Virus record (IMG/VR): IMGVR_UViG_3300023313_000001
Span: 62,001 to 126,000 of that record
Strand: one strand, 5' to 3'
Length of the DNA: 64,000 nucleotides
In this document: positions 8,778-50,487 of the stretch, in pieces
Layout of the letters: every line of letters starts with the position of its first letter
Numbering within the stretch: position 1 is the first letter of the stretch
Made by a program: the position numbers and the translations under genes
Notes under the pieces: model-generated
What the model saw: the letters and a program-made list of their open reading frames with translations, nothing else
The model's database searches: none
Told to the model about the DNA's origin: nothing

Positions 8778-10097
8778 ATGAAATCAGTTGGGGCAGAATA
8801 CATTAAATCTAAACGACGTGATTTTGCGTTGTATATTTTGAGCAATAGATCAATACCAGCAATATCAGATGGGTTAAAGCCTGCAGCTAGACGGGTGTTG
8901 TGGACAGCTCGAGATGGAAAAAAAATAAAGAGTGCAACACTAGCTGGTGCAACAATGCCGATCCACCCTCATGCATCCCCAGAAGGTATAATCAATACCA
9001 TCGCAGGACCATACGGAAATAATATCCCACTACTGACTGGTATTGGAGCATTTGGTACACTATTGGCACCTGATGCGTATGGAGCAAGTAGATACACTAG
9101 TGTGAAAATTTCTGAGTTTACCAAGGATGTAATTTTTCGAGATATTGAAATAATCCCAATGAAAGAGAATTATGACTCCACATTAATGGAACCTTGTCAT
9201 TTCTTACCTTTGGTCCCCATATCGTTGATTAATCCTAGTGAGGGAATAGCTATCGGATACTCCACTACAATACTTCCACGCAAATTGGAAGATGTTGTAA
9301 TGGCCCAGTTAACCCACCTAGGTGGAGGTGAGATAACCTCGTTGACACCAACGTTTGTTCCAACGAACAATGTGGCAGAGAAGGTAGACGACAAGTGGAT
9401 GTTTAACGGATCTGTGGAACGAATAAATTCAACCAATGTGAAGATTACAAAAATACCGTTTGGAAGTACCCACGCCAAAATTGTCGGGAATGAAAAAAGT
9501 AAGTTAAACAAACTGCTAGAGAATGGAACCATCCTAGATTATGAGGACCATTCCAGTAAACAGATTGATATCAGAGTAAAATTCAAACGTGGAGCGTTGG
9601 CGAAGATAAACGATAATAAGTTAATTAGCATGTTTGGATTGGCTGTTAACGCGATAGAGCATATGAATTTAATCAACTTTGACGGAACGTCCATATTAAC
9701 CACGAGTGATGTAGAAGTGATTAGGTCGTTTACAGACTGGAGACTTAAATGGTATGTACCACGGTATGAACGATTAAACGACATGCTATCTATTGATATT
9801 CAACGATATAAAGACGTGATCACTGCTATTGAGAATAATGCAGGCCAGGTGGCATCCACACTAAAAGACAAGAAGAAATTGCAGGAATGGCTATCTAGTT
9901 TAGGTATAGTATACGATGACTACATTGCGTCATTGCCGTCCTACCGGTACACCATCGACGAACGAAACAAAACCGAAACCTTGCTGGGTAAAGCTCTGCG
10001 ACAGCAGCTCATATATGAAGGAATTCTCAGTTCAGAAATCAAACGTAAAAACATATATAAAAATGAACTTAAAGAACTTTTAACCAGATTTAAATAA
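8778..10097 (+). CDS. DNA topoisomerase II medium subunit (T4 gp52, GyrA/ParC-like)
   Basis: RSIPAISDGLKPAARR, HPH, catalytic GASRYT, INPSEGIAIGYST. Confidence 0.95.
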   Translation: MKSVGAEYIKSKRRDFALYILSNRSIPAISDGLKPAARRVLWTARDGKKIKSATLAGATMPIHPHASPEGIINTIAGPYGNNIPLLTGIGAFGTLLAPDAYGASRYTSVKISEFTKDVIFRDIEIIPMKENYDSTLMEPCHFLPLVPISLINPSEGIAIGYSTTILPRKLEDVVMAQLTHLGGGEITSLTPTFVPTNNVAEKVDDKWMFNGSVERINSTNVKITKIPFGSTHAKIVGNEKSKLNKLLENGTILDYEDHSSKQIDIRVKFKRGALAKINDNKLISMFGLAVNAIEHMNLINFDGTSILTTSDVEVIRSFTDWRLKWYVPRYERLNDMLSIDIQRYKDVITAIENNAGQVASTLKDKKKLQEWLSSLGIVYDDYIASLPSYRYTIDERNKTETLLGKALRQQLIYEGILSSEIKRKNIYKNELKELLTRFK

Positions 10098-10107
10098 AGG
10101 AGATACC

Positions 10108-10308
10108 ATGAAAAATTATAGTGACAATGCAATAGATAGATCAGATGTCTTAGATTTCATAGTGAAATCAGTAGATGACTCGTCTGTACAACGGGATGAA
10201 CAACATGAGCATTTATGTACAAAAGTATCACTATTAGTGAAAGCTGTGACTGTTATCACTGTGTGTAATGCCTTGGCCATTGCCTGGATAATAACTGCAT
10301 TGACGTAG
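10108..10308 (+). CDS. small protein with C-terminal transmembrane segment
   Basis: AGGAG RBS; hydrophobic C-terminal helix. Confidence 0.55.
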   Translation: MKNYSDNAIDRSDVLDFIVKSVDDSSVQRDEQHEHLCTKVSLLVKAVTVITVCNALAIAWIITALT

Positions 10309-10888: not shown

Positions 10889-12577
10889 TTACTGTAATGT
10901 AAAAACTAGATTGCCGCAATCCCAAATTCTACAGTACCCGTTGTTAACCATATTTTCGTATTCTGTTTGATTAGGATCAAACGTTGATAGTACTTTGTGC
11001 AATTTATGCTTTTGAAACATCACTCGACTAAACAATTTATTTGGGTCATGTCTCCAGTAGAAATAATTTGGTTTACTGATATGAGATAGTTCAAACCCTA
11101 ACGTGTGATATAACTGCCCAGAACTTCGACGCCTATCAGCGTATGATATTATACTGCCTTGATGATTTCGACGAAAATGGGTCAACAATTTGCCTGCTCC
11201 ACCAACTACAGACATCCCTACTTTATTACAAAACCGAATCAGTTCATAGTCCAGCTTGTTAGAATATCTACTGCGACCAAATGTCATTACAGCAACAATA
11301 TTACTATCATACAATAATCCGTACCTGTAGCTACTAGTATCACTCCCTTGCAGATGGTTATCATTTAAGAACTCATTCGCCTGGGCAGCAGATAGATCAA
11401 CTATGCTACATTGTCTAGCTCCTAGTTTTGAAGTAGCTACATTCAATCTATTAGCTAACATACTTTTCCAAATGTTTCGTTTGACTGGATTACGCCACTC
11501 GTTTTCAAATATATGAACAAGGTCATAACCGTGTTTTTTTGCTACCTCAGTTTTATGCAAGTGATATGTTGAAGTTATTCGGTCGTGACAGTCACTGTGC
11601 CAATATATTCCATCACATTCAATAGCTATATTAGCTTGGGCTACAACAATATCTAATTCCTTACCTGATAAAATTGCTCGGTCATTTGTGATCACACGAT
11701 GTGGATATATTTGATCAACCCACGATGTTACTTCACGTTCAAATCCGGATTGGTGTTGTTGATACGGTATGTTGTGTCGTTTAAGCCAGTTCAGTACTGT
11801 ACCATAGTATACCCCAGTCTCGTCACCGATAGATTTAATGCCACGTTGAAGATCCACATGTTGATGCTTTAACCAGTCCTTATCTTGCAATCGAACATCT
11901 GACAAATCGTATATTGACTGGACTCTACGTTGAATTATCGAGCTATTTTCCTGGTCTGTTCGTTTCAAGGCTGTAATGTTTCTTTTTTCTACTACCTCTG
12001 GTATATGTGACGGATTGGTTACTCCACTCCCATACAATCGAGATAACGTTTGTTGTCTGCGTTCCTGATATTCCTTAGTTTGGGTAAAGTGTTTTCCGTT
12101 ATACTTCTCTCGTATTTGGCTTTGCTTCTTGCTTTGATTTTCGTTATTGGAACTAATATTAGATGCTCCATATTTCGTTTTGATCGTTTCCTGTTTAGAT
12201 AAATATAATGTGGACTGCTTAGAGAAATTATGAATGGCACCATACTTGTTCAACATGGTTTGCTGTTTCTTAGTTATAGATTCTTGTGATATTTGCTTCC
12301 CTACAGATGCTTGAGACGCACACTGGGTAGAGCAATACTTAGCATATCCCTGGGTCATTCCTCTGTATTTAACAGCGCTAGGACATTGAGTCAGTGCACA
12401 CAATACCCCAGACTTAATAGTATTGATTACGCAGTACACACGTTCATTTATACTAACATCTTCTGGTAAAAAACATGTTTGATCCAATAGTTTGGTTAGC
12501 AGAGAATTGTCCTTGAGGATATACGATTTCATATACCTGGGGCGAATTGACTTATCTAATAATCCTTGGAGTATCAT
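10889..12577 (-). CDS. free-standing homing endonuclease-like protein, family B
   Basis: K..T...KYG helical repeats, HTH, ELDIVV...IAIECDGIYWHS nuclease, C-terminal GNAT-like domain; 2 nt after nrdB stop. Confidence 0.75.
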   Translation of the reverse strand: MILQGLLDKSIRPRYMKSYILKDNSLLTKLLDQTCFLPEDVSINERVYCVINTIKSGVLCALTQCPSAVKYRGMTQGYAKYCSTQCASQASVGKQISQESITKKQQTMLNKYGAIHNFSKQSTLYLSKQETIKTKYGASNISSNNENQSKKQSQIREKYNGKHFTQTKEYQERRQQTLSRLYGSGVTNPSHIPEVVEKRNITALKRTDQENSSIIQRRVQSIYDLSDVRLQDKDWLKHQHVDLQRGIKSIGDETGVYYGTVLNWLKRHNIPYQQHQSGFEREVTSWVDQIYPHRVITNDRAILSGKELDIVVAQANIAIECDGIYWHSDCHDRITSTYHLHKTEVAKKHGYDLVHIFENEWRNPVKRNIWKSMLANRLNVATSKLGARQCSIVDLSAAQANEFLNDNHLQGSDTSSYRYGLLYDSNIVAVMTFGRSRYSNKLDYELIRFCNKVGMSVVGGAGKLLTHFRRNHQGSIISYADRRRSSGQLYHTLGFELSHISKPNYFYWRHDPNKLFSRVMFQKHKLHKVLSTFDPNQTEYENMVNNGYCRIWDCGNLVFTLQ

Positions 12578-12579
12578 AT

Positions 12580-13674
12580 TCAGAATTCAAAATCGTTGAA
12601 ATCATTATCCTCTAAGTCTGAGTTAATAGCTCCAACTAGGTATGACTCTTTTTCAGTCTCTTGCGGTGCTTCTTGCACACCTTTGCTATTTAACCAATTA
12701 GACATCCAATTTAATGGATTTTTCGTGAAAGGAAATGCTGGAGATAATCCTACTGTACGCATACGTTTATTGGTCATATGATCAATATATCGATGTAACA
12801 CGTTGGATGTTAATCCAATCATCGCTCCATGCTCAAATAGATAATCTGCCCATAATTTCTCTTGAGTAGCAGCATCATTGAACATTTGCTCACTCAGGGG
12901 AATACATTCTTCAGCAATTTGAGCCCATTCAGCTCCCTCGTCACCTTGTCTTAGTGTTTTCAACACATTTTGAGTGAGAGCTAGATGTTGAGACTCATCT
13001 CTAGCAATCAATCCCATAATTTTTGCAGTTCCTTCCATAGTTTTGTTTTCTCCAAAAGCAAAGTTGCATGCAAATGATATATAGAACCGTACACCCTCGA
13101 GAATATTAATACACATTAGTGCTAAATATAGTTTTCGTTTAAGATACGGCAAATCTACAGATGTAGGATCAACCAAATACCGATGCATACATTCAATAAA
13201 GTCGTCGTAATACTTACCAATGGATGCTGCTCTATCGATTATTTCAGGAATATCTAAAATATGATCCAATACTTCACTAGGATCTGCAAATAAATTTCGT
13301 ATCATGTGAGTGTATGAACGACTGTGAAGAGTTTCAAAGAACCCCCAAGTAATTGTAGCTGCTTCAAATTCAGGGTTAGTAATAATAGGTAGAAATGCAT
13401 TCAACACTCCTCTGCTTTGCATTGAGTCTAGCAATATTTGGTATTTTAGATTAGATACAAATATAAACTGTTCACCTTCGGTTAATTTTTTGAAATCTAC
13501 ACGATCCTTATTTAATCCAACTTCTTCAGGACGCCAGAAGAACCCTAACATGGTGTTATTAGCTTTCTCAAATATCGGATATTTAGGATCAGCATATTCT
13601 TGTATGTTGACCCCATTTGTTCCGAAAAATATTGGTTCTTGTTTAAAATCTATTTTATTATGTGAAAATATCAT
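12580..13674 (-). CDS. nrdB: ribonucleotide reductase class Ia beta subunit
   Basis: FFWRPEEV, LLDSMQ, ETLHSRSY (radical Tyr), LEGVRFY, RDESQH, APQETE. Confidence 0.97.
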   Translation of the reverse strand: MIFSHNKIDFKQEPIFFGTNGVNIQEYADPKYPIFEKANNTMLGFFWRPEEVGLNKDRVDFKKLTEGEQFIFVSNLKYQILLDSMQSRGVLNAFLPIITNPEFEAATITWGFFETLHSRSYTHMIRNLFADPSEVLDHILDIPEIIDRAASIGKYYDDFIECMHRYLVDPTSVDLPYLKRKLYLALMCINILEGVRFYISFACNFAFGENKTMEGTAKIMGLIARDESQHLALTQNVLKTLRQGDEGAEWAQIAEECIPLSEQMFNDAATQEKLWADYLFEHGAMIGLTSNVLHRYIDHMTNKRMRTVGLSPAFPFTKNPLNWMSNWLNSKGVQEAPQETEKESYLVGAINSDLEDNDFNDFEF

Positions 13675-13677
13675 TTC

Positions 13678-14820
13678 TCACTCCGTTAAAGTAATTTTAT
13701 TAAAATGTATGTTACCTAACATATCTATCAGAATTTGTAATTTATCTGAGTTAATATTCAAGCATTCAGTATAGCCATTAAATTTTTCTATTGGGTGATA
13801 TTGGTCACTACTATGCATGTTTAAAATATTTTGTTCCAGTTTAAATGCATCAAACAATGTTAGTGGAGCTGATGCTAATAGTGTACCATTAAATTTAGTA
13901 TACGATCCCATTCGTGACGTTAAGTTTTTCGTTATTCCTACTTTAACAAAAGTGTCGTCGTGTTGCACCAATTGCACTAAGTAGATAAATCCTGGGGTGT
14001 CACCTAGCAATGGATCAGTATTCAGTCTATTATAATCATATCCACCTAACTTATTACATCTTATGCATCCATATCCACCAACAGTGTGGCTATTGGGTTT
14101 CTGTAAGAAAACCCCATGCTTAGGACATTCGATCGCTACTTTGGTATGTACGTTGACATAATCTACTTGATCATACCTATAATAATTATCATGAATACGA
14201 TTTGCATCTATTATAAATTGGCGCTTGTGGACAATCAACCGATTTTCTTGCTTGCATCCAGGACACTGTCCACTATTGCTTAAATGAGTAGTTGGAGATT
14301 GAGTGAATATACCATGATTGGGACATATAATGGTCACATGTCGCTTCATAGTAGTATACTCTGTTAACGAATAATCATATTGGTTGTGATGTTTTTGACT
14401 AGCTAGTTCTATGAATTCATCTCTGGTTTGCATACGGCAATTACATAGTTTACACCCAGATCCTTTCAAATGATCTGAAGGTCTCTGCTCGAAATATCCA
14501 TGTTTAGGACACTCAATTGATACTTTGGTGTAGCTGTTCACATAGTTAACATTAGCATAATTATATTTGCTGTCATGTCTAATGTTGGCACGCTTGATAA
14601 AAGCTTCTACACCTAATGATACACGTTCTTTGCCACAAGACGGACATCCATAACCTGAAAGATGATCGCTGGCTTTTTGTTGAAACCTCCCGTGTTTGTT
14701 ACATATTATAGATAAGGAACCTAACGATCCAGCGTATATCACCTCACTGTAGTCGTACATGTTTCCATGTTTGGATTTAGCTTTGCATATATAATCGTCT
14801 GTTGTTATTTTTTTAGGCAA
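13678..14820 (-). CDS. free-standing homing endonuclease-like protein, family A (4 repeats)
   Basis: Four ECPKHG.F.Q..S.H..G.GCxxC repeats; FIYLVQL...FVKVGIT...YTEC. Confidence 0.75.
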   Translation of the reverse strand: MPKKITTDDYICKAKSKHGNMYDYSEVIYAGSLGSLSIICNKHGRFQQKASDHLSGYGCPSCGKERVSLGVEAFIKRANIRHDSKYNYANVNYVNSYTKVSIECPKHGYFEQRPSDHLKGSGCKLCNCRMQTRDEFIELASQKHHNQYDYSLTEYTTMKRHVTIICPNHGIFTQSPTTHLSNSGQCPGCKQENRLIVHKRQFIIDANRIHDNYYRYDQVDYVNVHTKVAIECPKHGVFLQKPNSHTVGGYGCIRCNKLGGYDYNRLNTDPLLGDTPGFIYLVQLVQHDDTFVKVGITKNLTSRMGSYTKFNGTLLASAPLTLFDAFKLEQNILNMHSSDQYHPIEKFNGYTECLNINSDKLQILIDMLGNIHFNKITLTE

Positions 14821-42667: not shown

Positions 42668-43256
42668 CGCTGTACTAGATACATTATTCGAACCAAGAGG
42701 GGCAACAACTAAGCGTGCTGATATTGGAATTCAGACAAATGGTATTGATATATCTAACAGATATATGCAACCTAGTCAGGGCGGAACAGCAACTGCAACA
42801 GCAACAAATATAATGAGCAATGGATTGGATATTGCCACATTGTTTACTCAAATTGGTACTGTAATCAATCAATCTATTACGTGGGTTGGTTCTATATCAC
42901 TGAGTGCTACAGGGACCACGTTGGCTATTGTGAATTTCTCATTAGGGTCAGATGGTACTACTGCACAAACAGGCACCGGCACTACAGTTGGTGATTGGTT
43001 GACTACAGTGGGTGCAGGGAACGGGTCATTATATGAATGTCGTGCTTCCAGTATTTCCGGTAGTGTGTTGAGCAGTGGCCCCACAGTGTTTACTCCAATC
43101 AGCTCCAATGTGTTGTTTAGTTTAAATGGTAACTCTACTAAGTCCACATCATTTAATGTTGATATAAGAGAAATAGCAAACCCAGCGAATACGTTCACGC
43201 GTGCTTGTACATTGAGTATAACAGTTACCGGTGGCGGCTTCGGAGGGGGGCTTTAA
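42651..43256 (+). CDS. tail-fibre-associated (tip/adhesin-like) protein
   Basis: Overlaps the fibre stop; Thr/Ser-rich beta domain, Gly-rich C-terminus. Confidence 0.5.
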   Translation: MTQLTNAVLDTLFEPRGATTKRADIGIQTNGIDISNRYMQPSQGGTATATATNIMSNGLDIATLFTQIGTVINQSITWVGSISLSATGTTLAIVNFSLGSDGTTAQTGTGTTVGDWLTTVGAGNGSLYECRASSISGSVLSSGPTVFTPISSNVLFSLNGNSTKSTSFNVDIREIANPANTFTRACTLSITVTGGGFGGGL

Positions 43257-43264
43257 TATACTAG

Positions 43265-43293
43265 TTTACTGTGTATTAATACCAATGTATGAT
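43265..43293 (+). promoter_or_regulatory. sigma70-type promoter of the DNA polymerase operon
   Basis: TTTACT-17 nt-TATGAT with extended TG; two GTATTAATAC palindromes overlap or flank it. Confidence 0.65.
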
Positions 43294-43319
43294 GTATTAA
43301 TACATAGGAGAACAGTAAC

Positions 43320-44918
43320 TTGAGTTATATTTCAGCTTGGAGAAAATTAAATGACGTGATAGTTTGGGAGCGAGATCCAGACGGGAAGCGTTATAAAACT
43401 ACCTACCCAGGAATATTTGAGTTTTACTCCAAACATGTAGGTGGTTCGTATGCCAATATATATGGTGACAACTTAATTAAACACGAATTTAAAACGTGGT
43501 TTGATATGCACTCAGCTAAAAAACAATTCACTGAACGAGCGGAATTGTTATATGAGTCAGACATATTACCAGAAATGAAAGTACTGTCAGAACACTATTA
43601 TCAGGCAGAACCTCCTAAACTTCACTATACACTGTGGGATATCGAAGTTGATTATGACCCATCCCTAGCATATGCAGATACAGCAATTGATAATGCAGTT
43701 GCTCCCATAAACGCAGTAGCAATACATCATAAATGGAGTGGTGAATCCATAGTAATAGCTGTTCCTCCACCATCATGGACTGGATCATTAAAAGAATCTA
43801 CCGAGAAACTTAGTGATCTAGCTACAGAAACCAATACAACTATACTACTAGTAGCAACAGAGGCAGATTTGATAACCACATTGTTGGATGAATTTGAGGG
43901 CTCTGATGTTATTAGTGGGTGGAATTCATCCTGGTTTGACACCCCATATTTAGCGAAACGAGTATTATCAGTGCTGGGACCAAAAGCGTTTAACCGACTA
44001 TCATTTGCTGGAGCAGGCAAACCTTCTTTTAGAACAGTTGAAGTTTTTGGACAAGAGCGTATTACAATCGATTTAAGTGGGCGCATTAGTTGGGATTACA
44101 TGGAACTGTTTAAAAAATTCGAAATGAATGAACGCCCATCATATAGCTTAGAGGCAATCTCTAATGAAATACTTCCAGACTTACCTAAGCTGGAATACGA
44201 CGGAACTTTGCATGAATTGTATAATAACGATTTCGAACATTTCATACGATATAATATTCGTGATACCGAAGTGTTGGCAGGGTTCGAAGATAAACTTGGG
44301 TATCTAGCATTAGCTAACGTATTGTACCATTCATCTTGTGGACAACCAAATCAGATCTTTGGGACCATACGGTTAGCTGATCACGCCATCATTAATTATT
44401 GTCACAACGAATTAAATCGTAAAGTTCCAGATTGGGACATGTATAAGCAGGATGGTCGTATTGCAGGTGCAATGGTACTTACCCCCCAAATAGGACTACA
44501 TCAGAATATAGGGAGTATTGATATCACAAGTCTGTATCCGTCTGCAATTAGATGTATTAACATATCTCCAGAAACTCTCATTGGACAAATGAATGGTACG
44601 TTAGATATGGATGATCGAGCTAAGCATTCTGCATGGGATAGTGTGTATCGTAGTGACACTAGGGATCCAATTACATTAATCTACGACAATGGGGTAGATG
44701 GGTGGTCCGGTGCTGAAACTCATACTGGAAAGGAATGGCAGCAAATTTTAGTTGATCGGAAGTGGGCAATCTCTGGATACGGAACAATATTCCGACAGGA
44801 TGTACAGGGAATGATTCCTGCGGTATTAACAGAGTGGTTTGGTCAACGCAAAAAATATAAAAAACTAATGGTAGAAGCAAAAGACTCAGCTGAAGCCATC
44901 CTCGATAAGTATCGATGA
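43320..44918 (+). CDS. polB: family B DNA polymerase, N-terminal part (3'-5' exonuclease + motif A); TTG start
   Basis: WDIEVD, SGWNSSWFDTPY, YNIRDTE, SIDITSLYPSAI, WFGQRKKYKK; AGGAG RBS. Confidence 0.92.
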   Translation: MSYISAWRKLNDVIVWERDPDGKRYKTTYPGIFEFYSKHVGGSYANIYGDNLIKHEFKTWFDMHSAKKQFTERAELLYESDILPEMKVLSEHYYQAEPPKLHYTLWDIEVDYDPSLAYADTAIDNAVAPINAVAIHHKWSGESIVIAVPPPSWTGSLKESTEKLSDLATETNTTILLVATEADLITTLLDEFEGSDVISGWNSSWFDTPYLAKRVLSVLGPKAFNRLSFAGAGKPSFRTVEVFGQERITIDLSGRISWDYMELFKKFEMNERPSYSLEAISNEILPDLPKLEYDGTLHELYNNDFEHFIRYNIRDTEVLAGFEDKLGYLALANVLYHSSCGQPNQIFGTIRLADHAIINYCHNELNRKVPDWDMYKQDGRIAGAMVLTPQIGLHQNIGSIDITSLYPSAIRCINISPETLIGQMNGTLDMDDRAKHSAWDSVYRSDTRDPITLIYDNGVDGWSGAETHTGKEWQQILVDRKWAISGYGTIFRQDVQGMIPAVLTEWFGQRKKYKKLMVEAKDSAEAILDKYR

Positions 44919-44921
44919 TTT

Positions 44922-46814
44922 ATGAAAAAGGATGCAGCCAGTTTAGTTGATGTTGAACAAAGCTTGACCGATGCAGGGGTGTTAAACTTCGCGGAAAATA
45001 AAATATCAGCCAATCGTGCACGAGCTTGGATTAAGTGTAATGATGATACATTAATCAGATATTACACTAGGTTTTTACCTGCCAGTGCTGAATATATGGA
45101 GAGATTGTATTGTATATTGAATGATATCTGGCAACTTCCACGATGTGTTGTTTGTACGAAAACACACACACGGTTTGATGGGTCAGTGAAAGGATATAAG
45201 AAACATTGTAGTATGGCCTGTACTACAAAAGATCCTGATGTTCGTGATAAAAAGAATAAAACTATGGTTAAACGGTATGGTGTTAAGCACGCTCTCCAAA
45301 GTCCAGAGTTACGTGACAAATGTAAGCAAACCAACATGGATAGGTTTGGTACAGAATATGCATCCTCAAGTGCCCAGGTAAAAGATCGTGTTAAACAAAC
45401 TAACATGAAGCGTTTTGGTACTCCGTGCTCACTACAATACGATGCTGTTGCACGCAAATCTGACAGTACAATGATGGATAAGTATGGTGTTAAGCATGCA
45501 TTACAAAATAAAGATTTATTGCTAAAAAAAGAACATACATGTTTGATTAAGTATGGTGAGAAACAATATCCACAGACGGATGAGTTTAAGCAAAAGTTTA
45601 AACAAGCTATGGTTGACAGGTTTGGTGTAGATCACCCTTCTAAATCTACAGAGCTGCGTAACAAAGCTAAACAATCGATGATGGAGAGGTATGGAGTAGA
45701 ATATACACTACAGTCCCCCGAATTGATGGATGCCTATATCACCACTATGATGGATGTGTGGGGAACGTCAAACCCACAACGGATTCATTTAGTAGGAGAT
45801 GTACTGGATAACTTAAATAACCCTGATTGGTTATTCGATCAACACTATACCCAGAGAAAATCAATACTCCAAATATCTAAGGAATTGCAAATTACTAGAG
45901 AGACTTTAAGTAGATGGTTTTCCACTCATAATATAACTATACAACAACGTGGATATTCGGTATCATCTGAAGAACAGGAATTGATTGATTTCATAACAAC
46001 TAATTATACAGGAACAGTAATAACAAACAATAGATCTGTGATACACCCACACGAATTGGATATAATATTACCAGATATCAATGTGGCGTTTGAATATTGT
46101 GGGTTATATTGGCATTCAGATGTACATAATCATATTACCCACAATTATCATAAAACTAAGATGGATGCATGCACTGACGTTGGGTTGACATTATATACAA
46201 TTTTTTCTGACGAGTGGTGTATAACTAAGGATATAGTAAAATCTAAGGTATTACATCTCATTGGTTGTTCAAAGGTGCAGCGAACATATGCAAGATTATG
46301 TGGAGTTGTATCTGTAGATACACAAACTAAGAGATCTTTTTTTAACAAAAATCACATTCAACGAAGTGGTCCAGGATCTATTACCTACGGGTTAACATAC
46401 AATGATGAAATAATATCTGTAATGACTTTTATCAAAAAATCAGATAATGTTTTTGTATTAAACAGATTTGCGTCCAGTAGGTCTGTCGTAGGTGGATTTT
46501 CAAAATTGTTGAAACATTTCAAGAAACACAATACATGGTCTGTTATAGAAACATTTGCAGATCTTAGGTGGAGTCGTGGTAATTTATATACTAGTACAGG
46601 TTTCACCTTATGTAGATTGCTCAAACCAGACTATTATTATGTTGTTGGAAATAAACGAATTCATAAGTTCAATTATAGACGAAAAATGTTACCTACGAAA
46701 TTGTCTGTATTCAATCCAGAACTATCCGAGGTTGAAAATTGTAAATTGAATGGGGTTTACCGAATATGGGATTGTGGAAAGATAAAATACATTACCAAAA
46801 ACGAGGAACTATAA
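44922..46814 (+). CDS. free-standing homing endonuclease-like protein, family B, inserted between the polymerase halves
   Basis: T.M.RYGV.HALQ repeats, HTH, ELDIILPDINVAFEYCGLYWHS, GNAT-like C-terminus. Confidence 0.78.
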   Translation: MKKDAASLVDVEQSLTDAGVLNFAENKISANRARAWIKCNDDTLIRYYTRFLPASAEYMERLYCILNDIWQLPRCVVCTKTHTRFDGSVKGYKKHCSMACTTKDPDVRDKKNKTMVKRYGVKHALQSPELRDKCKQTNMDRFGTEYASSSAQVKDRVKQTNMKRFGTPCSLQYDAVARKSDSTMMDKYGVKHALQNKDLLLKKEHTCLIKYGEKQYPQTDEFKQKFKQAMVDRFGVDHPSKSTELRNKAKQSMMERYGVEYTLQSPELMDAYITTMMDVWGTSNPQRIHLVGDVLDNLNNPDWLFDQHYTQRKSILQISKELQITRETLSRWFSTHNITIQQRGYSVSSEEQELIDFITTNYTGTVITNNRSVIHPHELDIILPDINVAFEYCGLYWHSDVHNHITHNYHKTKMDACTDVGLTLYTIFSDEWCITKDIVKSKVLHLIGCSKVQRTYARLCGVVSVDTQTKRSFFNKNHIQRSGPGSITYGLTYNDEIISVMTFIKKSDNVFVLNRFASSRSVVGGFSKLLKHFKKHNTWSVIETFADLRWSRGNLYTSTGFTLCRLLKPDYYYVVGNKRIHKFNYRRKMLPTKLSVFNPELSEVENCKLNGVYRIWDCGKIKYITKNEEL

Positions 46815-48439
46815 TGCCTATTAGACAAGGGTTAGAATTATCTGATGCAGATGCCATAGAATATGATAGATTGGTAGAGTTGGCATCTTACTATGATAGA
46901 TTACAATACACCATGAAGATTAAGCTTAATAGCTTGTACGGAGCACTCACGAACTTTTATTTTAGATTCTTTGATTTGCGATTAGGGCAAAGTACTACCG
47001 GAACAGGTAGGGCTATATTAGATCATATGTGCTCACAGACAGCACTAATACTAGATGGTAAGTATGACATGTTTTCAGAGTCCATAGCGTACGGTGATTC
47101 GGTGGCAGCAAAATCTTCAATATTCACCTCAAAAGGACGTGTGAATATTGAAGATTTGTATGGGACTACAGATGTGTACTTTACTACGATGGGATCGAAT
47201 GATAAGGAATATTGCTACCCAAACCAGTTGAAAGTGTTGACATTTGATCCAAAAACCGAGCAGCTATGTTTTCGTGACGTAAGATATGTTATGCGACACA
47301 AAGTGCAAAAGCAAATGTATCAAATAACAACTTGCTATGGCGATACTGTAGTTGTGACTGAAGACCATTCATTAATGGTGTTGGACAGTAACTCAGTATT
47401 AACTGAAGCTACTCCAGCGGATTGTATAGCCAACGAATCTATAGGTATGAGGTGTGATTTTGACGGGACTAGCATATTCAACACCACTATAACTAAAATC
47501 ACACCTGTGGAATATGATGGTTATGTATATGACATCGAAGTAGATGACACCCACACTTTTTTTGCAAATGATGTTTTGGTACATAACACTGACTCAGTAT
47601 ATTTTAAGACAAATGCTGAATATGGATCTGATGGAATGTCTACTGAGGAGATTAACCTTAGAGCAATTGCAATTGCTGATAAGATCGGAGAATTAGCAGA
47701 TGCATCCTTTCCAGAATTCTGTAAAAAAGCTTTTTGCATCCAGCCAGAGTATGAAAATATAATCAAGTGTGATAGAGAGGTAGTGGCTAAACGTGGAATT
47801 TTTGTATCTAAAAAACGCTATGTGCTCAAACTCGTGGATTTAGATGGGTACCGTTGTGACAAGTTAAAAGCAATGGGGTTAGAAATGAAAAAAACCACTA
47901 CTCCAAAAATTATTCAAAAGTTTTTAGAGGATGTTATTAACCTAATATTGAATGGAGAAACTGAGTGGGATGACATTGATAATTTCATTGTGGATTATAG
48001 AGACCAAGTAAAGACAGCCTTACCAGTTATTGATATCGGATTACCTAAAGGGGTTAAAAAAGTGGAGTTCTACACAGCGCAACACATTGCAGGCGTTAAT
48101 GATAAAGGAGAGAAGCCGAGGTTGCCTGGACATGTAGCTGCATCCATTCACTACAATGAGTGTTTGAAACACTTCAACGATACTGATAGCCAGCCAATTA
48201 AAACTGGCAGTAAGATTAAAGTATTCTATTTAACCGAAAAATATGGAAAATTTAAAAGCATTGCCATACCTACTGAAGCTAAACACTTACCTACATGGTT
48301 CAGTGACTATTGTGAAGTTGATCGGGAAATTCATGAACAGAAGTTAATAGATAACAACCTGGAAAAGATTTTTACAGCAATTGGCCGAGATGTGCCAGAC
48401 GCTCAATCACAATTCAATGATTCGTTAATAGAGTGGTGA
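46814..48439 (+). CDS. polB: family B DNA polymerase, C-terminal part (motifs B and C, thumb), intein-containing
   Basis: KIKLNSLYG, YGD|TDS split by an intein, KKRY, MGLE; TAATG overlap and GAGGA RBS support the 46814 start. Confidence 0.92.
   Translation: MPIRQGLELSDADAIEYDRLVELASYYDRLQYTMKIKLNSLYGALTNFYFRFFDLRLGQSTTGTGRAILDHMCSQTALILDGKYDMFSESIAYGDSVAAKSSIFTSKGRVNIEDLYGTTDVYFTTMGSNDKEYCYPNQLKVLTFDPKTEQLCFRDVRYVMRHKVQKQMYQITTCYGDTVVVTEDHSLMVLDSNSVLTEATPADCIANESIGMRCDFDGTSIFNTTITKITPVEYDGYVYDIEVDDTHTFFANDVLVHNTDSVYFKTNAEYGSDGMSTEEINLRAIAIADKIGELADASFPEFCKKAFCIQPEYENIIKCDREVVAKRGIFVSKKRYVLKLVDLDGYRCDKLKAMGLEMKKTTTPKIIQKFLEDVINLILNGETEWDDIDNFIVDYRDQVKTALPVIDIGLPKGVKKVEFYTAQHIAGVNDKGEKPRLPGHVAASIHYNECLKHFNDTDSQPIKTGSKIKVFYLTEKYGKFKSIAIPTEAKHLPTWFSDYCEVDREIHEQKLIDNNLEKIFTAIGRDVPDAQSQFNDSLIEW
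47099..47587 (+). mobile_element. mini-intein (163 aa, no endonuclease) in polymerase motif C
   Basis: YGD|SVAAKS...VTEDHSL (block B)...VYDIEV (block F)...NDVLVHN|TDS. Confidence 0.95.
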
Positions 48440-48490
48440 TATGTTGATTTTGGTGGAGCTAAAATGTATAGTTCCGTATGGAGGAACGAT

Positions 48491-49210
48491 ATGAGATTAG
48501 ATAACAATTTGCTGGTATTACTCAAACGAGCAACTGCTGTGGCCAAACAAATGGGCATTAGTGAGTTGTCCATGGAAGATAATAACATAGGAACAATGTT
48601 CCGTGGGATGTCAGATTTGGGTGGAACTCCAGTCATATTACACCATATGTTGGATGAAGATCTTCCATTTGGAGGTCTTGCAATTAAAGACACTGGGTCA
48701 TTCATAGCTAAGTTAAACTTAGCTACAGATAAAGACGAGAACTTCAAGATATTCCTAAATGTGGATGAACGGAAAAACCATGTAAAAAGTATTGAGTTAA
48801 AAGGAACCAAATTCAAAATGTCATTCATTACTGGATCAGCTGATGCGGTGAAGGCTCCTAAACGACTGAAGGACCCTAGTAAGTATAGTTTTCAAATGGA
48901 ACCAGATGATGTTAAGACTCTGGATAAAGCTATTAAAGCAATGGCCGGAACTTTTGTCACTTTTGTTAGCGACGGTAATGAGGTGTCGTTTGAAATTAGA
49001 GTAGGGAAATCAGATGTTTTTAGTTATAAATTTTGTGACGAAGTGTTATCTATGGATGGAGATGATGCATCGTTTGCATTTTCGTATCCAGTAAAAACAA
49101 TCACCACATTAATCAAAAATAGTGAGAGTGGTATATTTCAAGTAAGTAAAAAAGGAATATTTAATGGCATTATGCAAGACACTAATGTGTTTATATTTCC
49201 GAGGGTGTAA
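48491..49210 (+). CDS. probable DNA sliding clamp (T4 gp45-like)
   Basis: About 240 aa directly after the polymerase; two-domain beta-alpha pattern resembling gp45; GGAGG RBS. Confidence 0.5.
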   Translation: MRLDNNLLVLLKRATAVAKQMGISELSMEDNNIGTMFRGMSDLGGTPVILHHMLDEDLPFGGLAIKDTGSFIAKLNLATDKDENFKIFLNVDERKNHVKSIELKGTKFKMSFITGSADAVKAPKRLKDPSKYSFQMEPDDVKTLDKAIKAMAGTFVTFVSDGNEVSFEIRVGKSDVFSYKFCDEVLSMDGDDASFAFSYPVKTITTLIKNSESGIFQVSKKGIFNGIMQDTNVFIFPRV

Positions 49211-49212
49211 TT

Positions 49213-49557
49213 ATGTTGGTTAGTAATAAACGGTATGAACAGGACAATAGAAAAACTAGTGATCTATTAATAACGTTAGTAGATAAAATAGCATCATTGG
49301 AGTTGATCAGTGATAACTTACAATATCAGGTGAAGGTGCTCAACGATATCCGTGCACGTAAGGTTAGTGATGAGCCTTGGGTGGAAGTAATTGGTGGGGA
49401 CATAGACCCTGAAAAGGGTTTGCAGTTGAAGCTCGATTGGAACGATGCGTTTATTGATCAACTGAGGTCTAAAGGATTTAAAGGAACTTCAGAGAGCTCG
49501 TTGATTGGAGAATATCTGCTACAACTAAGTCAGATGATGACTCAAGATGACAAATAG
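49213..49557 (+). CDS. conserved hypothetical protein
   Basis: EPWVEV...LDWNDAFI..L...GF.G pattern resembles a T4-superfamily hypothetical family. Confidence 0.55.
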   Translation: MLVSNKRYEQDNRKTSDLLITLVDKIASLELISDNLQYQVKVLNDIRARKVSDEPWVEVIGGDIDPEKGLQLKLDWNDAFIDQLRSKGFKGTSESSLIGEYLLQLSQMMTQDDK

Positions 49558-49569
49558 ACTGGTGACATA

Positions 49570-50487
49570 ATGAAGACATTTATTTGCTTAGATATGTCGA
49601 ATTTGCTACACCGAACATTCTTCGCTGGGTATAAGATGGGTGGCAATACAGATGACGATACTATGGCTGGTTTGGCCTTACATTCAGCGTTTACTACACT
49701 GAACAAGTACTTCAAGAAGTACTCACCAGACCAAGTCATTTGTACCTTTGATAGACCGAATTGGAGAAAAGCATACACAAAATCTGATATGTGTTTGTCT
49801 GGTAAAGTATATAAAGCTAATCGCCGTCAAAACATGACTCCAAACGAAGAGAACCGATATAACAAATTCAAAGAACACATCACTGAGTTTGAACAAATCA
49901 TTCGAACGAAAACATCTATGATATGTATGGCAGCTGATCAACTAGAAGCAGATGATATCATGGCTGGATTCGTTGAAGCATACCCAGACGATAGAGTATT
50001 TGTGATTAGTGCAGATAAGGATCTAATACAACTACTAAAATTTCCTAATGTTCGATTAATAGACCCAGCTACAGACAAAGATAGAGAGTGCGATGATGTA
50101 GAATGGTTTATGTTTCTCAAGTGTATTCGAGGAGATCGTGGAGACAATGTACATAGTGCATACCCTAGAGTCAGGGAAACTAAGGTCCGTGAAGCATTTG
50201 ATGATGAATTCAAAAGACTAACCATGTTGAATACCAAGATAACTATATTGGTTAAAGATGAACCAGTAGAATTACTTGTAGGGGATTTGTTTGAAGAGAA
50301 TAAGTTGTTGATGGATCTTTATACGCAACCAGCTCCAGTTAAACGATTGATTACAAAGACTATATCAGATGCGATGGCTAATCCTGGTAAATACAGTCAC
50401 TTCCACTTCATTAAATTCTGTGGACAACAAAACTTATTAGCTATAGCTAAAAATGTTGATCAATATATTAAAATGCTATCGAGGTAA
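49570..50487 (+). CDS. rnh: RNase H / 5'-3' exonuclease (FEN-like, T4 rnh)
   Basis: LDMSN, YKANR, EADDIMA, SADKDLIQL, GDRGDNV. Confidence 0.9.
   Translation: MKTFICLDMSNLLHRTFFAGYKMGGNTDDDTMAGLALHSAFTTLNKYFKKYSPDQVICTFDRPNWRKAYTKSDMCLSGKVYKANRRQNMTPNEENRYNKFKEHITEFEQIIRTKTSMICMAADQLEADDIMAGFVEAYPDDRVFVISADKDLIQLLKFPNVRLIDPATDKDRECDDVEWFMFLKCIRGDRGDNVHSAYPRVRETKVREAFDDEFKRLTMLNTKITILVKDEPVELLVGDLFEENKLLMDLYTQPAPVKRLITKTISDAMANPGKYSHFHFIKFCGQQNLLAIAKNVDQYIKMLSR

What the first reader, a model, noticed from the sequence alone, without database searches (positions are those of the whole stretch)
43320..48439. DNA polymerase split at the fingers tip by a free-standing endonuclease
The N-half ends just after the first fingers helix (QRKKYKK...DKYR stop). 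The C-half starts at 46814 before motif B (KIKLNSLYG). The 630-aa endonuclease fills the gap with only 3 nt on one side and a TAATG overlap on the other, leaving no room for an intron core. Split gp43A/B polymerases are known in some T4-like phages; here the split coincides with a mobile nuclease, so a two-subunit enzyme is implied.
Basis: partly seen in the sequence, partly recalled or inferred. Interest (0 to 1): 0.6.

Follow-up and report, generated by a model that had tools for sequence, protein, structure and literature searches.

The report
Split phage DNA polymerase with nuclease and intein
A jumbo phage from a microbial mat encodes its replicative DNA polymerase as two separate genes with a mobile nuclease gene between them and a self-splicing protein insert (intein) in the second half; each feature has a known precedent, but the combination is new and the split junction appears to move between phages.

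Summary
A family-B polymerase N-half (43320-44918) is followed by a 630-aa free-standing nuclease gene (44922-46814) and a C-half (46814-48439). Independent contigs bridge both junctions.

This is the classic 'pol-c' site. The C-half must therefore splice itself before it can work.

The split lies in the fingertip, between the residues equivalent to RB69 R482/K486 and K560/N564. This is the region where T4-like gp43A/B polymerases are split. I found no intron, no split intein at the junction, and no second polymerase in the 229-kb contig.

The nuclease belongs to the Vsr-like 'EDxHD' family typified by I-Bth0305I. It has at least 8 paralogs in the contig.

The nuclease probably did not create the split. 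Eighteen of 119 relatives are split at the same point and share a junction-specific tail and head. Their gaps hold nothing, or unrelated genes. The split state changes at least 9-10 times on the polymerase tree, so the junction looks laterally mobile.

Verdict: a real, ordinary-in-kind two-subunit polymerase. It is a new variant in a new phage lineage. Interest is moderate.

The parts
43270..43307 (+). Hairpin just upstream of the N-half ribosome-binding site, built from two copies of the palindrome GTATTAATAC (43273-43282 and 43294-43303). Possible translational operator or regulatory element. Inference only.
   Evidence: The motif occurs only twice in the 64-kb window, both here (expected 0.19). 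The RNA fold gives a 14-bp stem, -17.1 kcal/mol, z -2.9.
43320..44918 (+). Polymerase N-half ('43A-like'), 532 aa. Contains Exo I (DIEVD), Exo II (NSSWFD), Exo III (YNIRD), motif A (DITSLYPS), the first fingers helix with R510/K514, and then a 14-aa junction-specific tail (...SAEAILDKYR).
   Evidence: The TTG start with AGGAG 9 nt upstream matches the MSYISA N-terminus conserved in relatives.
44896..44935 (+). Predicted RNA stem (CCAUCCU / AGGAUG) enclosing the N-half stop and the nuclease start codon. No Shine-Dalgarno sequence lies before the nuclease ATG. This suggests low, translationally coupled expression of the nuclease.
   Evidence: -18.1 kcal/mol, z -2.3; upstream sequence. Inference by analogy with the hairpins described in PMC2677866.
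44922..46814 (+). Free-standing homing-type endonuclease gene, 630 aa. Domains: Cys-rich Zn-ribbon-like segment (about 45144-45221); DUF7487 repeats (about 45234-45782); weak helix-turn-helix (about 45843-45926); Vsr-like/EDxHD nuclease domain (about 45954-46268); Mom-like GNAT-fold domain (about 46287-46811).
   Evidence: PF24308 E 1e-40. phrog_3339 'homing endonuclease' E 5e-126. A family profile hits only PDB 3r3p (I-Bth0305I catalytic domain), E 2.4e-8. AlphaFold model pLDDT 96. VIA Z 12.0 (3hrl), 11.7 (Vsr, 1cw0) and 11.3 (3r3p) for model residues 6-110; GNAT and Mom Z 12-13.8 for residues 117-291. At least 8 paralogs in the same contig.
46803..46816 (+). GAGGA ribosome-binding site (46803-46807) inside the 3' end of the nuclease gene, plus the TAATG stop/start overlap (46812-46816) that couples the C-half to the upstream ORF.
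   Evidence: The same TAATG overlap joins the two halves directly in relative L016, which has no nuclease.
46814..47098 (+). C-half, N-extein part (residues 1-95). Contains a junction-specific head (MPIRQGLELSDADAIEYD...), the second fingers helix with motif B (KIKLNSLYG; K35/N39 = RB69 K560/N564), and a palm strand ending in YGD.
   Evidence: Predicted to dock on the N-half.
47099..47587 (+). 163-aa mini-intein with no endonuclease domain, inserted at YGD|TDS (pol-c allele site). It has Ser1, block B TEDH, block F VYDIEVDDTHTFFAN, block G VLVHN, and Thr+1.
   Evidence: PF14890 E 1.9e-16. TIGR01445 and TIGR01443, both above cutoff. PDB 9hth E 5e-13, PI-PkoII and others. Aligned with homologous mini-inteins of L016, L073 and L062 at 44-48% identity with all blocks invariant. 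The site is as described in PMC549080.
47588..48439 (+). C-half, C-extein part (283 aa). Contains TDS of motif C, the KKRY motif, the rest of the palm, the thumb and the C-terminal tail.
   Evidence: (aligns to RB69 678-838).
48464..50487 (+). Conserved replisome neighbours: sliding-clamp-like protein (48464-49210), a 114-aa protein (49213-49557), and an RNase H / 5'-3' exonuclease (49570-50487). The same order follows the unsplit polymerase in Xoo-sp13, XacN1 and L015.

Best explanation
This is the phage's replicative family-B DNA polymerase, made as a two-subunit enzyme from three translationally linked cistrons.

1. The N-half carries the exonuclease domain, motif A and the first fingers helix. 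It ends at a TGA in the fingertip.
2. A free-standing Vsr-like (EDxHD-type) homing endonuclease gene starts 3 nt later. It has no ribosome-binding site of its own and is probably translated at a low level by reinitiation.
3. The nuclease stop overlaps the start of the C-half (TAATG), and the C-half also has its own GAGGA site. The C-half carries the second fingers helix with motif B, motif C, the palm and the thumb.
4. The C-half is made as a precursor. Its 163-aa mini-intein excises itself and joins YGD to TDS, restoring motif C.
5. The spliced C-half then associates non-covalently with the N-half. The two fingers helices pack antiparallel, extended by a junction-specific tail (...AILDKYR) and head (MPIRQGLELSDADAIEYD...) that unsplit relatives lack.

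The split junction (tail, stop, gap, start, head) is an old element that moves laterally and is shared by many relatives. The nuclease is one of several alternative occupants of its gap. It most likely promotes spread of itself and its flanks by cutting nuclease-free alleles during co-infection.

Shown here: the anatomy, the homologies, the absence of an intron or split intein, the distribution among relatives, and the predicted docking. Inferred: actual splicing, actual assembly and activity, nuclease activity and its target, and translational coupling.
For: Anatomy and reading frames.

Nothing is missing from the polymerase. The joined exteins align end to end with the unsplit 882-aa polymerases of Xoo-sp13, XacN1 and RsoM2USA. 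About 15 residues are extra at the split.

Fingertip mapping to RB69.

All catalytic motifs are intact.

Intein. The site YGD|TDS is the pol-c site (PMC549080).

No group I or II intron in 43000-49000 at E<=10. The same tool finds ORF-less group I introns at 85-91 bits in the C-halves of relatives L073 and L100.

Only one PolB locus, no PolA, and only one intein in the 229-kb contig. Synteny pol-clamp-RNaseH matches relatives.

The split is conserved. Eighteen of 119 homologous N-parts stop at the same point. Eight split loci were examined, and all have the homologous tail and head. The head motif is in 0 of 101 unsplit relatives and the tail motif in 1 of 101.

The split state needs at least 5 changes on a 69-locus extein tree and at least 10 (9 forced by well-supported branches) on a 119-protein tree.

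Complex prediction, N-half plus C-half residues 1-95: ipSAE 0.83 in three runs, best of 3 controls 0.00. This mark was reached by 51 of 78 solved complexes and 2 of 108 mismatched pairs. The runs agree in at least 80% of contacts, and partner pLDDT is at least 79. Tail residues 520-532 touch head residues 4-24.

Precedent: split 43A/43B of Aeromonas phage 25 co-purify and polymerise (PMC2988022, citing Petrov 2010). Pfu polymerase split near the fingertip is fully active (PMC3061061).

Nuclease family.

Assembly integrity.
Against: - No expression or protein data exist. The only RNA run from the sample is tiny and holds none of the region.
- The contig is estimated to be 65% complete, so a second polymerase in the missing part cannot be excluded.
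- The complex prediction may pass 'from memory', because the two chains are pieces of a well-known single-chain fold. It used only the first 95 residues of the C-half.
- Intein activity is inferred from conserved blocks only.
- No target site for the nuclease was identified. Its closest homologs (36-41% identity) sit in unrelated contexts, so its link to this locus could be recent or incidental.
Confidence: 0.85

Rival explanations
1. The nuclease ORF lies in a group I (or II) intron, and RNA splicing joins the two halves into one mRNA and one polypeptide.
For: Homing endonucleases of this family do occur in group I introns (I-Bth0305I in recA; PMC3239194, PMC2677866). Relatives L073 and L100 carry group I introns in the same gene, at motif B.
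Against: No Rfam intron match anywhere in 43000-49000, even at E<=10, while the relatives' introns score 85-91 bits with the same tool. The ORF fills all but 3 nt of the gap. The N-half stop and the C-half start sit in a tail and head that are conserved as coding sequence in relatives whose halves are 0-12 nt apart, where no intron can fit.
Confidence: 0.03
2. A 'fractured gene': a split intein flanks the nuclease, and protein trans-splicing rejoins the halves at the fingertip.
For: This arrangement exists in this very polymerase family. L092 has a split intein at motif C with a 334-aa Vsr-like nuclease gene between the pieces. MIJ3 and PA5oct PolB have a split intein with an HNH nuclease (PMC6892783).
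Against: The sequence beyond the extein alignment is only about 14 aa (tail) and about 20 aa (head), too short for intein halves. No intein family hits the N-half or the first 95 residues of the C-half. The tail and head lack block A, B, F and G residues and are predicted to be helical extensions of the fingers.
Confidence: 0.02
3. The interrupted gene is a decaying pseudogene disabled by selfish elements. Replication depends on another polymerase, either phage-encoded in the unsequenced 35% or supplied by the host.
For: The contig is incomplete. Three interruptions affect one gene. The genome is riddled with nuclease genes.
Against: Both halves keep every catalytic motif and full length. The intein keeps all splicing blocks. 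Start and stop signals are well formed. The same split is maintained in at least 18 relatives, including a six-member clade with up to 3.7 kb of cargo between the halves. No other PolB or PolA is in the 229 kb. The locus keeps the replisome synteny of relatives with an unsplit gene.
Confidence: 0.05
4. The nuclease itself created the split on insertion, bringing the stop, the start, the tail and the head with it, as proposed for mobE in Aeh1 nrdA. The nuclease-free split alleles are later deletion derivatives.
For: In Aeh1, the tails originated with the mobE insertion and are needed for activity (PMC3045599). Dassa et al. propose loss of the free-standing nuclease as a normal later step (PMC2677866). 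The junction-specific tail and head are absent from unsplit alleles. This fits an origin by insertion of some nuclease cassette.
Against: Among about 23 split alleles seen, only the window carries this nuclease. The others hold nothing, a 68-aa ORF, or unrelated genes. The nearest homologs of this nuclease (at most 41% identity) are elsewhere in other phages. The nuclease ORF is slotted between a KYR-TGA and a TAATG that also exist without it. So this particular nuclease is more likely a late arrival, even if an earlier nuclease founded the split.
Confidence: 0.2

Closest known systems
Split gene 43 (43A/43B) of T4-related Aeromonas phages 25, 44RR, 31, 65 and Acinetobacter phage 133 (Petrov et al. 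2006, 2010; summarised in PMC2988022 and PMC3061061)
   Same: A family-B replicative polymerase cut in the fingertip between the two fingers helices. Two cistrons lie 2 bp to 3 kb apart. In phage 25, a free-standing homing endonuclease gene sits between the halves and a further self-splicing element sits in the 43B cistron. The halves co-purify and polymerise. There is the same doubt about whether the nuclease caused the split or invaded an already split gene.
   Different: The phage lineage differs: jumbo phages related to Xoo-sp13, XacN1 and RsoM2USA at 38-41% identity, not T4-like. The nuclease family differs: Vsr-like/EDxHD with DUF7487 repeats and a Mom-like domain, not GIY-YIG seg-like. 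The downstream element is a mini-intein at motif C, not a group I intron, although relatives L073 and L100 do have the intron. There is no untranslated intercistronic spacer here: the gaps are 3 nt and a 1-nt overlap.
Aeromonas phage Aeh1 nrdA-a / mobE / nrdA-b 'genes in pieces' (Friedrich 2007; Crona et al. 2011, PMC3045599)
   Same: An essential enzyme is cut by a free-standing nuclease gene with no intron or intein at the cut. Unique C- and N-terminal tails at the break are absent from uninterrupted homologs and are implicated in assembly.
   Different: The enzyme is ribonucleotide reductase and the nuclease is HNH-type. That case is known from a single phage. Here the tail/head junction recurs in many divergent relatives, with or without a nuclease.
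[quoted passage not shown] 2009, PMC2677866); I-Bth0305I (Taylor et al. 2011, PMC3239194)
   Same: The same nuclease superfamily, free-standing, sits between two halves of a phage DNA-metabolism gene. Dassa et al. also describe one intein-less case (SbcD-like) with extra residues at the break. A hairpin lies near the nuclease start.
   Different: No split intein at this break. The nuclease is much larger (630 aa against 266 aa for I-Bth0305I) and carries an extra Mom-like GNAT-fold domain after the catalytic domain.
pol-c allele inteins of family-B polymerases (archaeal Pol-2 inteins such as PI-PkoII; Mimivirus PolB, PMC549080; Salicola phage SCTP-2 mini-intein and the MIJ3 split intein, PMC6892783)
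   Same: The insertion point is identical (YGD|TDS), with Ser1 and Thr+1 and HINT blocks A, B, F and G. The C-terminal region resembles PI-PkoII.
   Different: This is a mini-intein without a LAGLIDADG domain, whereas relatives L018 and L072 carry the large form. It sits in a polymerase that is also split 285 nt upstream.
Engineered split Pfu polymerase (Hansen et al. 2011, PMC3061061)
   Same: A termination-reinitiation split near the fingertip, expressed from overlapping stop and start codons, gives a fully active two-piece family-B polymerase.
   Different: It is artificial and archaeal, with no added tail or head and no mobile elements.

Membership tests
Family-B (PolB, gp43-type) replicative DNA polymerase | Exo I/II/III motifs, motif A (DxxSLYPS), fingers R/K, motif B (KxxxNSxYG), motif C (YGDTDS) and KKRY, in canonical order | tested here: met
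   All are present across the two halves. Motif C is reconstituted only after removing residues 96-258 of the C-half.
Bicistronic 'split fingertip' gp43A/B polymerases | The break lies between the two antiparallel fingers helices, with separate stop and start codons and no residues of the catalytic core lost | tested here: met
   The N-half ends about 18 residues after the equivalent of RB69 K486. The C-half starts 34 residues before the equivalent of K560. Alignment to unsplit relatives shows only extra residues, none missing.
Bicistronic 'split fingertip' gp43A/B polymerases | The two polypeptides assemble into an active polymerase | tested here: inconclusive
   Only a prediction is available: ipSAE 0.83 against best control 0.00. 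This mark was reached by 51 of 78 solved complexes and 2 of 108 mismatches. The pass may reflect memory of the single-chain fold.
Class 1 intein, pol-c allele | HINT blocks A, B, F and G with a nucleophile at position 1, TxxH, a terminal HN and a nucleophile at +1; in-frame insertion at YGD|TDS | tested here: met
   Ser1, TEDH, VYDIEVDDTHTFFAN, VLVHN|T. PF14890 at 60.7 bits (cutoff 35.8). TIGR01445 at 40.3 bits (cutoff 24.5). TIGR01443 at 29 bits (cutoff 15.6). Site as in PMC549080.
Class 1 intein, pol-c allele | Protein splicing actually occurs | not testable with these tools
   Inferred from intact blocks and from the essential nature of motif C.
EDxHD / Vsr-like homing endonucleases (I-Bth0305I) | Catalytic domain homologous to I-Bth0305I and Vsr in sequence and fold, with the conserved acidic and His residues | tested here: met
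   A profile of 61 homologs hits only 3r3p in the whole PDB, E 2.4e-8, aligning the invariant E..G..WH block. The model (pLDDT 96) aligns to 3r3p at Z 11.3 over 95 residues, to Vsr 1cw0 at Z 11.7, and to 3hrl at Z 12.0. E52, H59 and H71 are invariant, and E39 and D41 nearly invariant, in the family alignment.
EDxHD / Vsr-like homing endonucleases (I-Bth0305I) | Site-specific cleavage of a nuclease-free allele, and homing | not testable with these tools
   Only circumstantial evidence exists. The distribution is sporadic. At least 8 paralogs lie in the contig, next to primase, topoisomerase II and RNR genes. The gene is absent from the closest relative's polymerase gene.
Fractured gene with split intein (Dassa 2009) | Intein N- and C-fragments flanking the free-standing nuclease | tested here: not met
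   No intein signal in the N-half or in the first 95 residues of the C-half. The extra residues are too few. Relative L092 shows the true arrangement at another site.
Intron-encoded homing endonuclease | A group I or II ribozyme core around the ORF | tested here: not met
   Rfam scan negative at E<=10, with a positive control in relatives. Only 3 nt are non-coding.

The most novel reading that the evidence does not exclude
The split junction itself (tail codons, stop, a gap that accepts cargo, start, head codons) is a portable genetic module. It has spread by nuclease-driven gene conversion into many divergent jumbo-phage polB genes. It carries its own helical 'zipper' that makes the break harmless.

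In this reading, the free-standing Vsr-like nuclease in the window mobilises in trans not only itself but also the nuclease-less mini-intein 285 nt downstream. In relatives it would do the same for an ORF-less group I intron. This would be an intein version of 'collaborative' or trans homing.

Three observations hint at this:
- The split state is scattered on the tree although the junction sequences are homologous.
- Within the window's own 17-member clade, the two split alleles (the window and P0014/L016) are placed apart. They are the only two with the mini-intein. The other 15 are 885-912 aa, which is too short to hold an intein. Their intein-less state is inferred from length alone.
- L073 combines the split, the intron and the mini-intein.
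Probability: 0.3. Interest if true: 0.65.

Novelty: new variant of a known kind. Interest (0 to 1): 0.45.

Why it matters
This locus extends the split-fingertip polymerase, previously known from a few T4-like phages, to an unrelated group of environmental jumbo phages. In that group about 15% of polymerases (18 of 119) are split at one homologous point.

The comparative set is large. It includes unsplit alleles; alleles split with no gap; alleles with a nuclease or with cargo genes; one possibly re-fused allele; and alleles with an intron or with a mini, large or split intein. This makes a natural series for studying how essential genes survive fragmentation and how selfish elements cooperate.

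The conserved tail and head pair is a candidate ready-made association module for engineering two-piece family-B polymerases.

The nuclease family (Vsr-like domain plus Mom-like GNAT domain, with hundreds of homologs) has no Pfam model covering its C-terminal 284 residues. It may be worth characterising.

Tried and rejected
- **Megablast of the 5.1-kb region against 50,697 phage records:** no match. The phage has no close sequenced relative.
- **The search for related loci with the single N-half:** nothing. It worked only with an alignment.
- **phmmer of the whole nuclease against PDB:** only a marginal GNAT hit. The profile search and the fold search were needed.
- **Pfam on the nuclease C-terminal 284 aa:** no family even at E<=1.
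- **RNA evidence:** the one metatranscriptome run from the same sample is tiny (about 4-5 million letters) and holds none of the region. It gives no information on splicing or expression.
- **TGA readthrough or recoding that would fuse the N-half to the in-frame nuclease:** considered and rejected. TGA ends 9 other long ORFs in the window.
- **Assembly chimera:** considered and rejected.
- **Co-transfer of the split and the intein as one tract:** not resolved. The 95-residue segment between them is 83% identical to unsplit L015 and 73% identical to split L016. That is the same ranking as the rest of the protein, so there is no sign of a foreign tract. The segment is also too short and too conserved to decide.
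- **Nuclease target site:** I did not find a way to identify it in silico.


Full report

Yes, to the base. The window is bases 62001-126000 of a 229.5-kb IMG/VR phage contig estimated to be 65% complete. Run searches trace it to a microbial-mat metagenome.

ORF listing and direct reading give the following layout.
- A 532-aa ORF runs from 43320 to 44918. It has a TTG start with AGGAG 9 nt upstream, and a TGA stop.
- Three bases (TTT) follow.
- A 630-aa ORF runs from 44922 to 46814.
- A 541-aa ORF starts at 46814 and runs to 48439. Its ATG shares its A with the preceding TAA (TAATG). GAGGA lies 6 nt upstream of that ATG.

The first and third ORFs are the two halves of a family-B polymerase. 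They hit PF03104 and PF00136, and they cover positions 12-493 and 574-845 of the full-length phage polymerase profile phrog_262.

Independent contigs of the source run bridge both junctions at about 200x without any variant. TAA, TGA and TAG all terminate other long ORFs in the window. The stops are therefore real and the standard code applies.

**2.

Motif C of the C-half reads ...IAYGD, then a 163-residue insert from S to VLVHN, then TDSVYF. The insert (47099-47587) is a mini-intein.
- It scores 60.7 bits on PF14890.
- It scores above cutoff on TIGR01445 and TIGR01443.
- Its best solved relative is a polymerase intein, 9hth, at E 5e-13. It also resembles PI-PkoII.
- Ser1, TEDH (block B), VYDIEVDDTHTFFAN (block F), VLVHN (block G) and Thr+1 are all present. 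They are invariant in homologous mini-inteins of three relatives.

The insertion point YGD|TDS is the 'pol-c' allele site described for archaeal and Mimivirus polymerases (PMC549080). Removing the insert restores a canonical YGDTDS. The exteins then align end to end with the unsplit polymerases of Xanthomonas phages Xoo-sp13 and XacN1 (both 882 aa) and Ralstonia phage RsoM2USA.

**3. Where the split lies**

N-half R510 and K514 align with RB69 gp43 R482 and K486. C-half K35 and N39 align with K560 and N564. According to PMC3061061, these are the fingers residues that hold the incoming nucleotide's phosphates.

Nothing is missing from the polymerase. Instead there are about 15 extra residues at the break.

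**4. Rival mechanisms**

- **Intron.** An Rfam scan of 43000-49000 at E<=10 finds no intron. The same scan finds ORF-less group I introns (RF00028, 85-91 bits) in motif B of the C-halves of two relatives, L073 and L100. The negative result for the window is therefore meaningful.
- **Split intein.** The tail and head are far too short to be intein halves and give no intein signal. A true 'fractured gene' does exist in relative L092, at motif C. It has an intein N-fragment, a 334-aa Vsr-like nuclease gene, and an intein C-fragment.
- **A second polymerase.** There is no second PolB and no PolA in the 229 kb. The locus keeps the polymerase-clamp-small protein-RNase H order of relatives with an unsplit gene. 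A second polymerase in the unsequenced third cannot be excluded.

**5. The nuclease**

PHROGs call it a homing endonuclease (phrog_3339, E 5e-126). Pfam sees only DUF7487 repeats in the N-terminal half.

I aligned the C-terminal 291 residues with 60 homologs. A profile of that alignment hits one sequence in the whole PDB, the catalytic domain of I-Bth0305I (3r3p), at E 2.4e-8. I-Bth0305I is the prototype of the EDxHD, or Vsr-like, homing endonuclease family (PMC3239194, PMC2677866).

An AlphaFold model of this region has pLDDT 96 and shows two domains.
- Model residues 6-110 match 3hrl (Z 12.0), Vsr with DNA (1cw0, Z 11.7) and 3r3p (Z 11.3).
- Model residues 117-291 have a GNAT fold. They are closest by Foldseek to phage Mu Mom. 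Atlas neighbours carry PF25680 (Mom).

The contig holds at least 8 paralogs of this nuclease at 32-47% identity. Two of them are in the window, next to primase/topoisomerase II and ribonucleotide reductase genes. Two nuclease genes of another family (phrog_681) lie nearby. This is typical behaviour for free-standing homing endonucleases.

There is no Shine-Dalgarno sequence before the nuclease ATG. The N-half stop and the nuclease ATG both lie inside a predicted stem (z -2.3). I infer weak, translationally coupled expression.

**6. Relatives**

The closest homologs of the N-half (55-69% identity) are unsplit and 885-912 aa. However, 18 of the best 119 stop at the same point.

I examined 80 IMG/VR loci plus several metagenome contigs. 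The fingertip-split alleles are as follows.
- **L016 / L031:** TAATG overlap with nothing between the halves. A mini-intein is present.
- **L073:** a 9-nt spacer, plus a group I intron and a mini-intein.
- **L017:** a 68-aa ORF between the halves.
- **L037:** two reverse-strand genes between the halves.
- **L098:** a GH5 cellulase-family gene and two others, 3.7 kb in total.
- **L099 and L101:** several genes between the halves.
- **L100:** a gap of about 100 nt, plus a group I intron.

Every one of the eight split alleles whose junction I read (all those listed above except L101, plus the window) shares a tail of the form ...[A/S][I/L][L/V]xKY[K/R/N/Q] and a head of the form M[P/S]x..G[I/V]x[I/M][S/T]xEDAxxYD.

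Among 101 unsplit relatives, none has the head motif. Only one has the tail motif. That one is P0064/L024, where the tail and a head-like segment are joined by a linker of about 36 residues. It may be a re-fused allele.

The split alleles are nevertheless scattered on the polymerase tree. At least 5 changes of state are needed among 69 loci (4 forced by supported branches). At least 10 are needed among 119 proteins (9 forced). The window's sister lineages (L015, P0002, P0003) are unsplit and intein-less.

Homologous junction sequences on non-sister polymerases point to lateral transfer of the junction by recombination. That is what homing would produce.

Only the window carries this nuclease in the gap. 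The nearest homologs of the nuclease (at most 41% identity) lie after a major capsid gene and near an IMPDH gene in other phages. I therefore think the nuclease is a later occupant of an existing split rather than its author. An earlier nuclease may still have founded the junction. The same doubt was raised for Aeromonas phage 25 (PMC2988022).

**7. How it most likely works**

The N-half and the C-half precursor are made separately. The intein splices out of the C-half. The two fingers helices then pack antiparallel, lengthened by the tail and head.

A complex prediction for the N-half with C-half residues 1-95 scored ipSAE 0.83 in three runs, against 0.00 for the best of three controls. This mark was reached by 51 of 78 solved complexes and 2 of 108 mismatched pairs. 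The runs agree in at least 80% of contacts, and partner pLDDT is at least 79. Tail residues 520-532 touch head residues 4-24, and motif A region residues touch the motif B and C strands.

This prediction supports binding but does not show it. It may partly reflect memory of the single-chain fold.

Direct precedents exist. 43A and 43B of phage 25 co-purify and polymerise (PMC2988022). Pfu polymerase split near the fingertip by a stop/start overlap is fully active (PMC3061061). In Aeh1 NrdA, unique tails at a nuclease-made break are required for activity (PMC3045599).

**8. Comparison and novelty**

The kind is known: a bicistronic split-fingertip PolB with a free-standing homing endonuclease and a further self-splicing element downstream (Petrov et al. 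2010). These features are new here:
- the phage lineage;
- the nuclease family and its Mom-like extra domain;
- an intein rather than an intron as the third element;
- the evidence that one homologous junction recurs in many divergent polymerases with variable cargo.

A more novel reading is not excluded: the junction is a portable module, and the nuclease mobilises the nuclease-less intein in trans. Within the window's 17-member clade, only the two split alleles are known to hold the mini-intein. The other 15 are judged intein-less from length alone. This is suggestive but phylogenetically thin.

Noticed in passing
window 3493-5301 (+), 10889-12577 (-); also 7144-8271 (+), 13678-14820 (-): Two paralogs of the polymerase-locus nuclease (phrog_3339/559) and two nuclease genes of another family (phrog_681 with DUF7487-like repeats) lie between primase, the topoisomerase II subunit genes (5291-7156 and 8778-10097) and an RNR small-subunit gene (12580-13674). 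The contig holds at least 8 paralogs in all. This is a very nuclease-rich replication module, reminiscent of mobA and mobE in T4.
   Followed up: partly
window 46287-46811 (nuclease residues 456-630): The homing-type nuclease ends in a strongly conserved GNAT-fold domain. It is closest to phage Mu Mom (Foldseek E 3e-7; VIA Z 12-13.8; Atlas neighbours carry PF25680). Pfam has no match for the C-terminal 284 residues. The domain follows the Vsr-like nuclease domain in hundreds of phage proteins with varied N-terminal DNA-binding modules. Its role is unknown. It could bind DNA, mediate dimerisation or be an enzyme.
   Followed up: partly
window 43270-43307: Two copies of the palindrome GTATTAATAC, the only two in the window, form a 14-bp hairpin ending 2 nt before the polymerase ribosome-binding site (-17.1 kcal/mol, z -2.9). 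It may be a translational operator like the one T4 gp43 uses on its own mRNA (from memory), or another regulatory site.
   Followed up: partly
L073:2864-3105 and L100:6804-7029: ORF-less group I introns (RF00028, 85 and 91 bits) interrupt motif B (KIKLNS|xYGAL) of the C-half cistron in two split relatives. L073 therefore combines the fingertip split, an intron and a mini-intein in one polymerase.
   Followed up: partly
L092:6983-11180: A textbook 'fractured gene'. The polymerase ORF ends in an intein N-fragment at motif C. A free-standing 334-aa Vsr-like nuclease gene follows (9233-10237). The next ORF starts with the intein C-fragment (...VLVHN|S). L049 may hold a related arrangement without a nuclease.
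   Followed up: partly
L018:8732-9985, L072:8861-10051 (also L034, L046, L076/77, L088): Large (about 400-aa) inteins with a LAGLIDADG domain occupy the same YGD|TDS site in unsplit relatives. The family therefore shows the mini, large and split forms of one intein allele.
   Followed up: partly
L024:2423-5191 (protein P0064): An unsplit polymerase has the split-type tail motif (AILHKYD) and a head-like segment joined by a linker of about 36 residues. It may be a split allele healed by loss of the stop codon.
   Followed up: no
L098:6563-10234, L099:6566-9616, L101:6563 onward, L037:8578-10292: In a clade of stably split polymerases, the two halves are separated by 1.7 to over 3.7 kb of unrelated genes. 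These include a GH5 cellulase-family protein, a nucleotidyltransferase-like gene and a GNAT-like gene on the opposite strand. The intercistronic gap behaves as a cargo-insertion hotspot.
   Followed up: partly
window 44916-44924: The N-half and the nuclease ORF are in the same frame, separated only by TGA TTT. A rare readthrough would give an N-half-nuclease fusion. There is no evidence that this is used.
   Followed up: no
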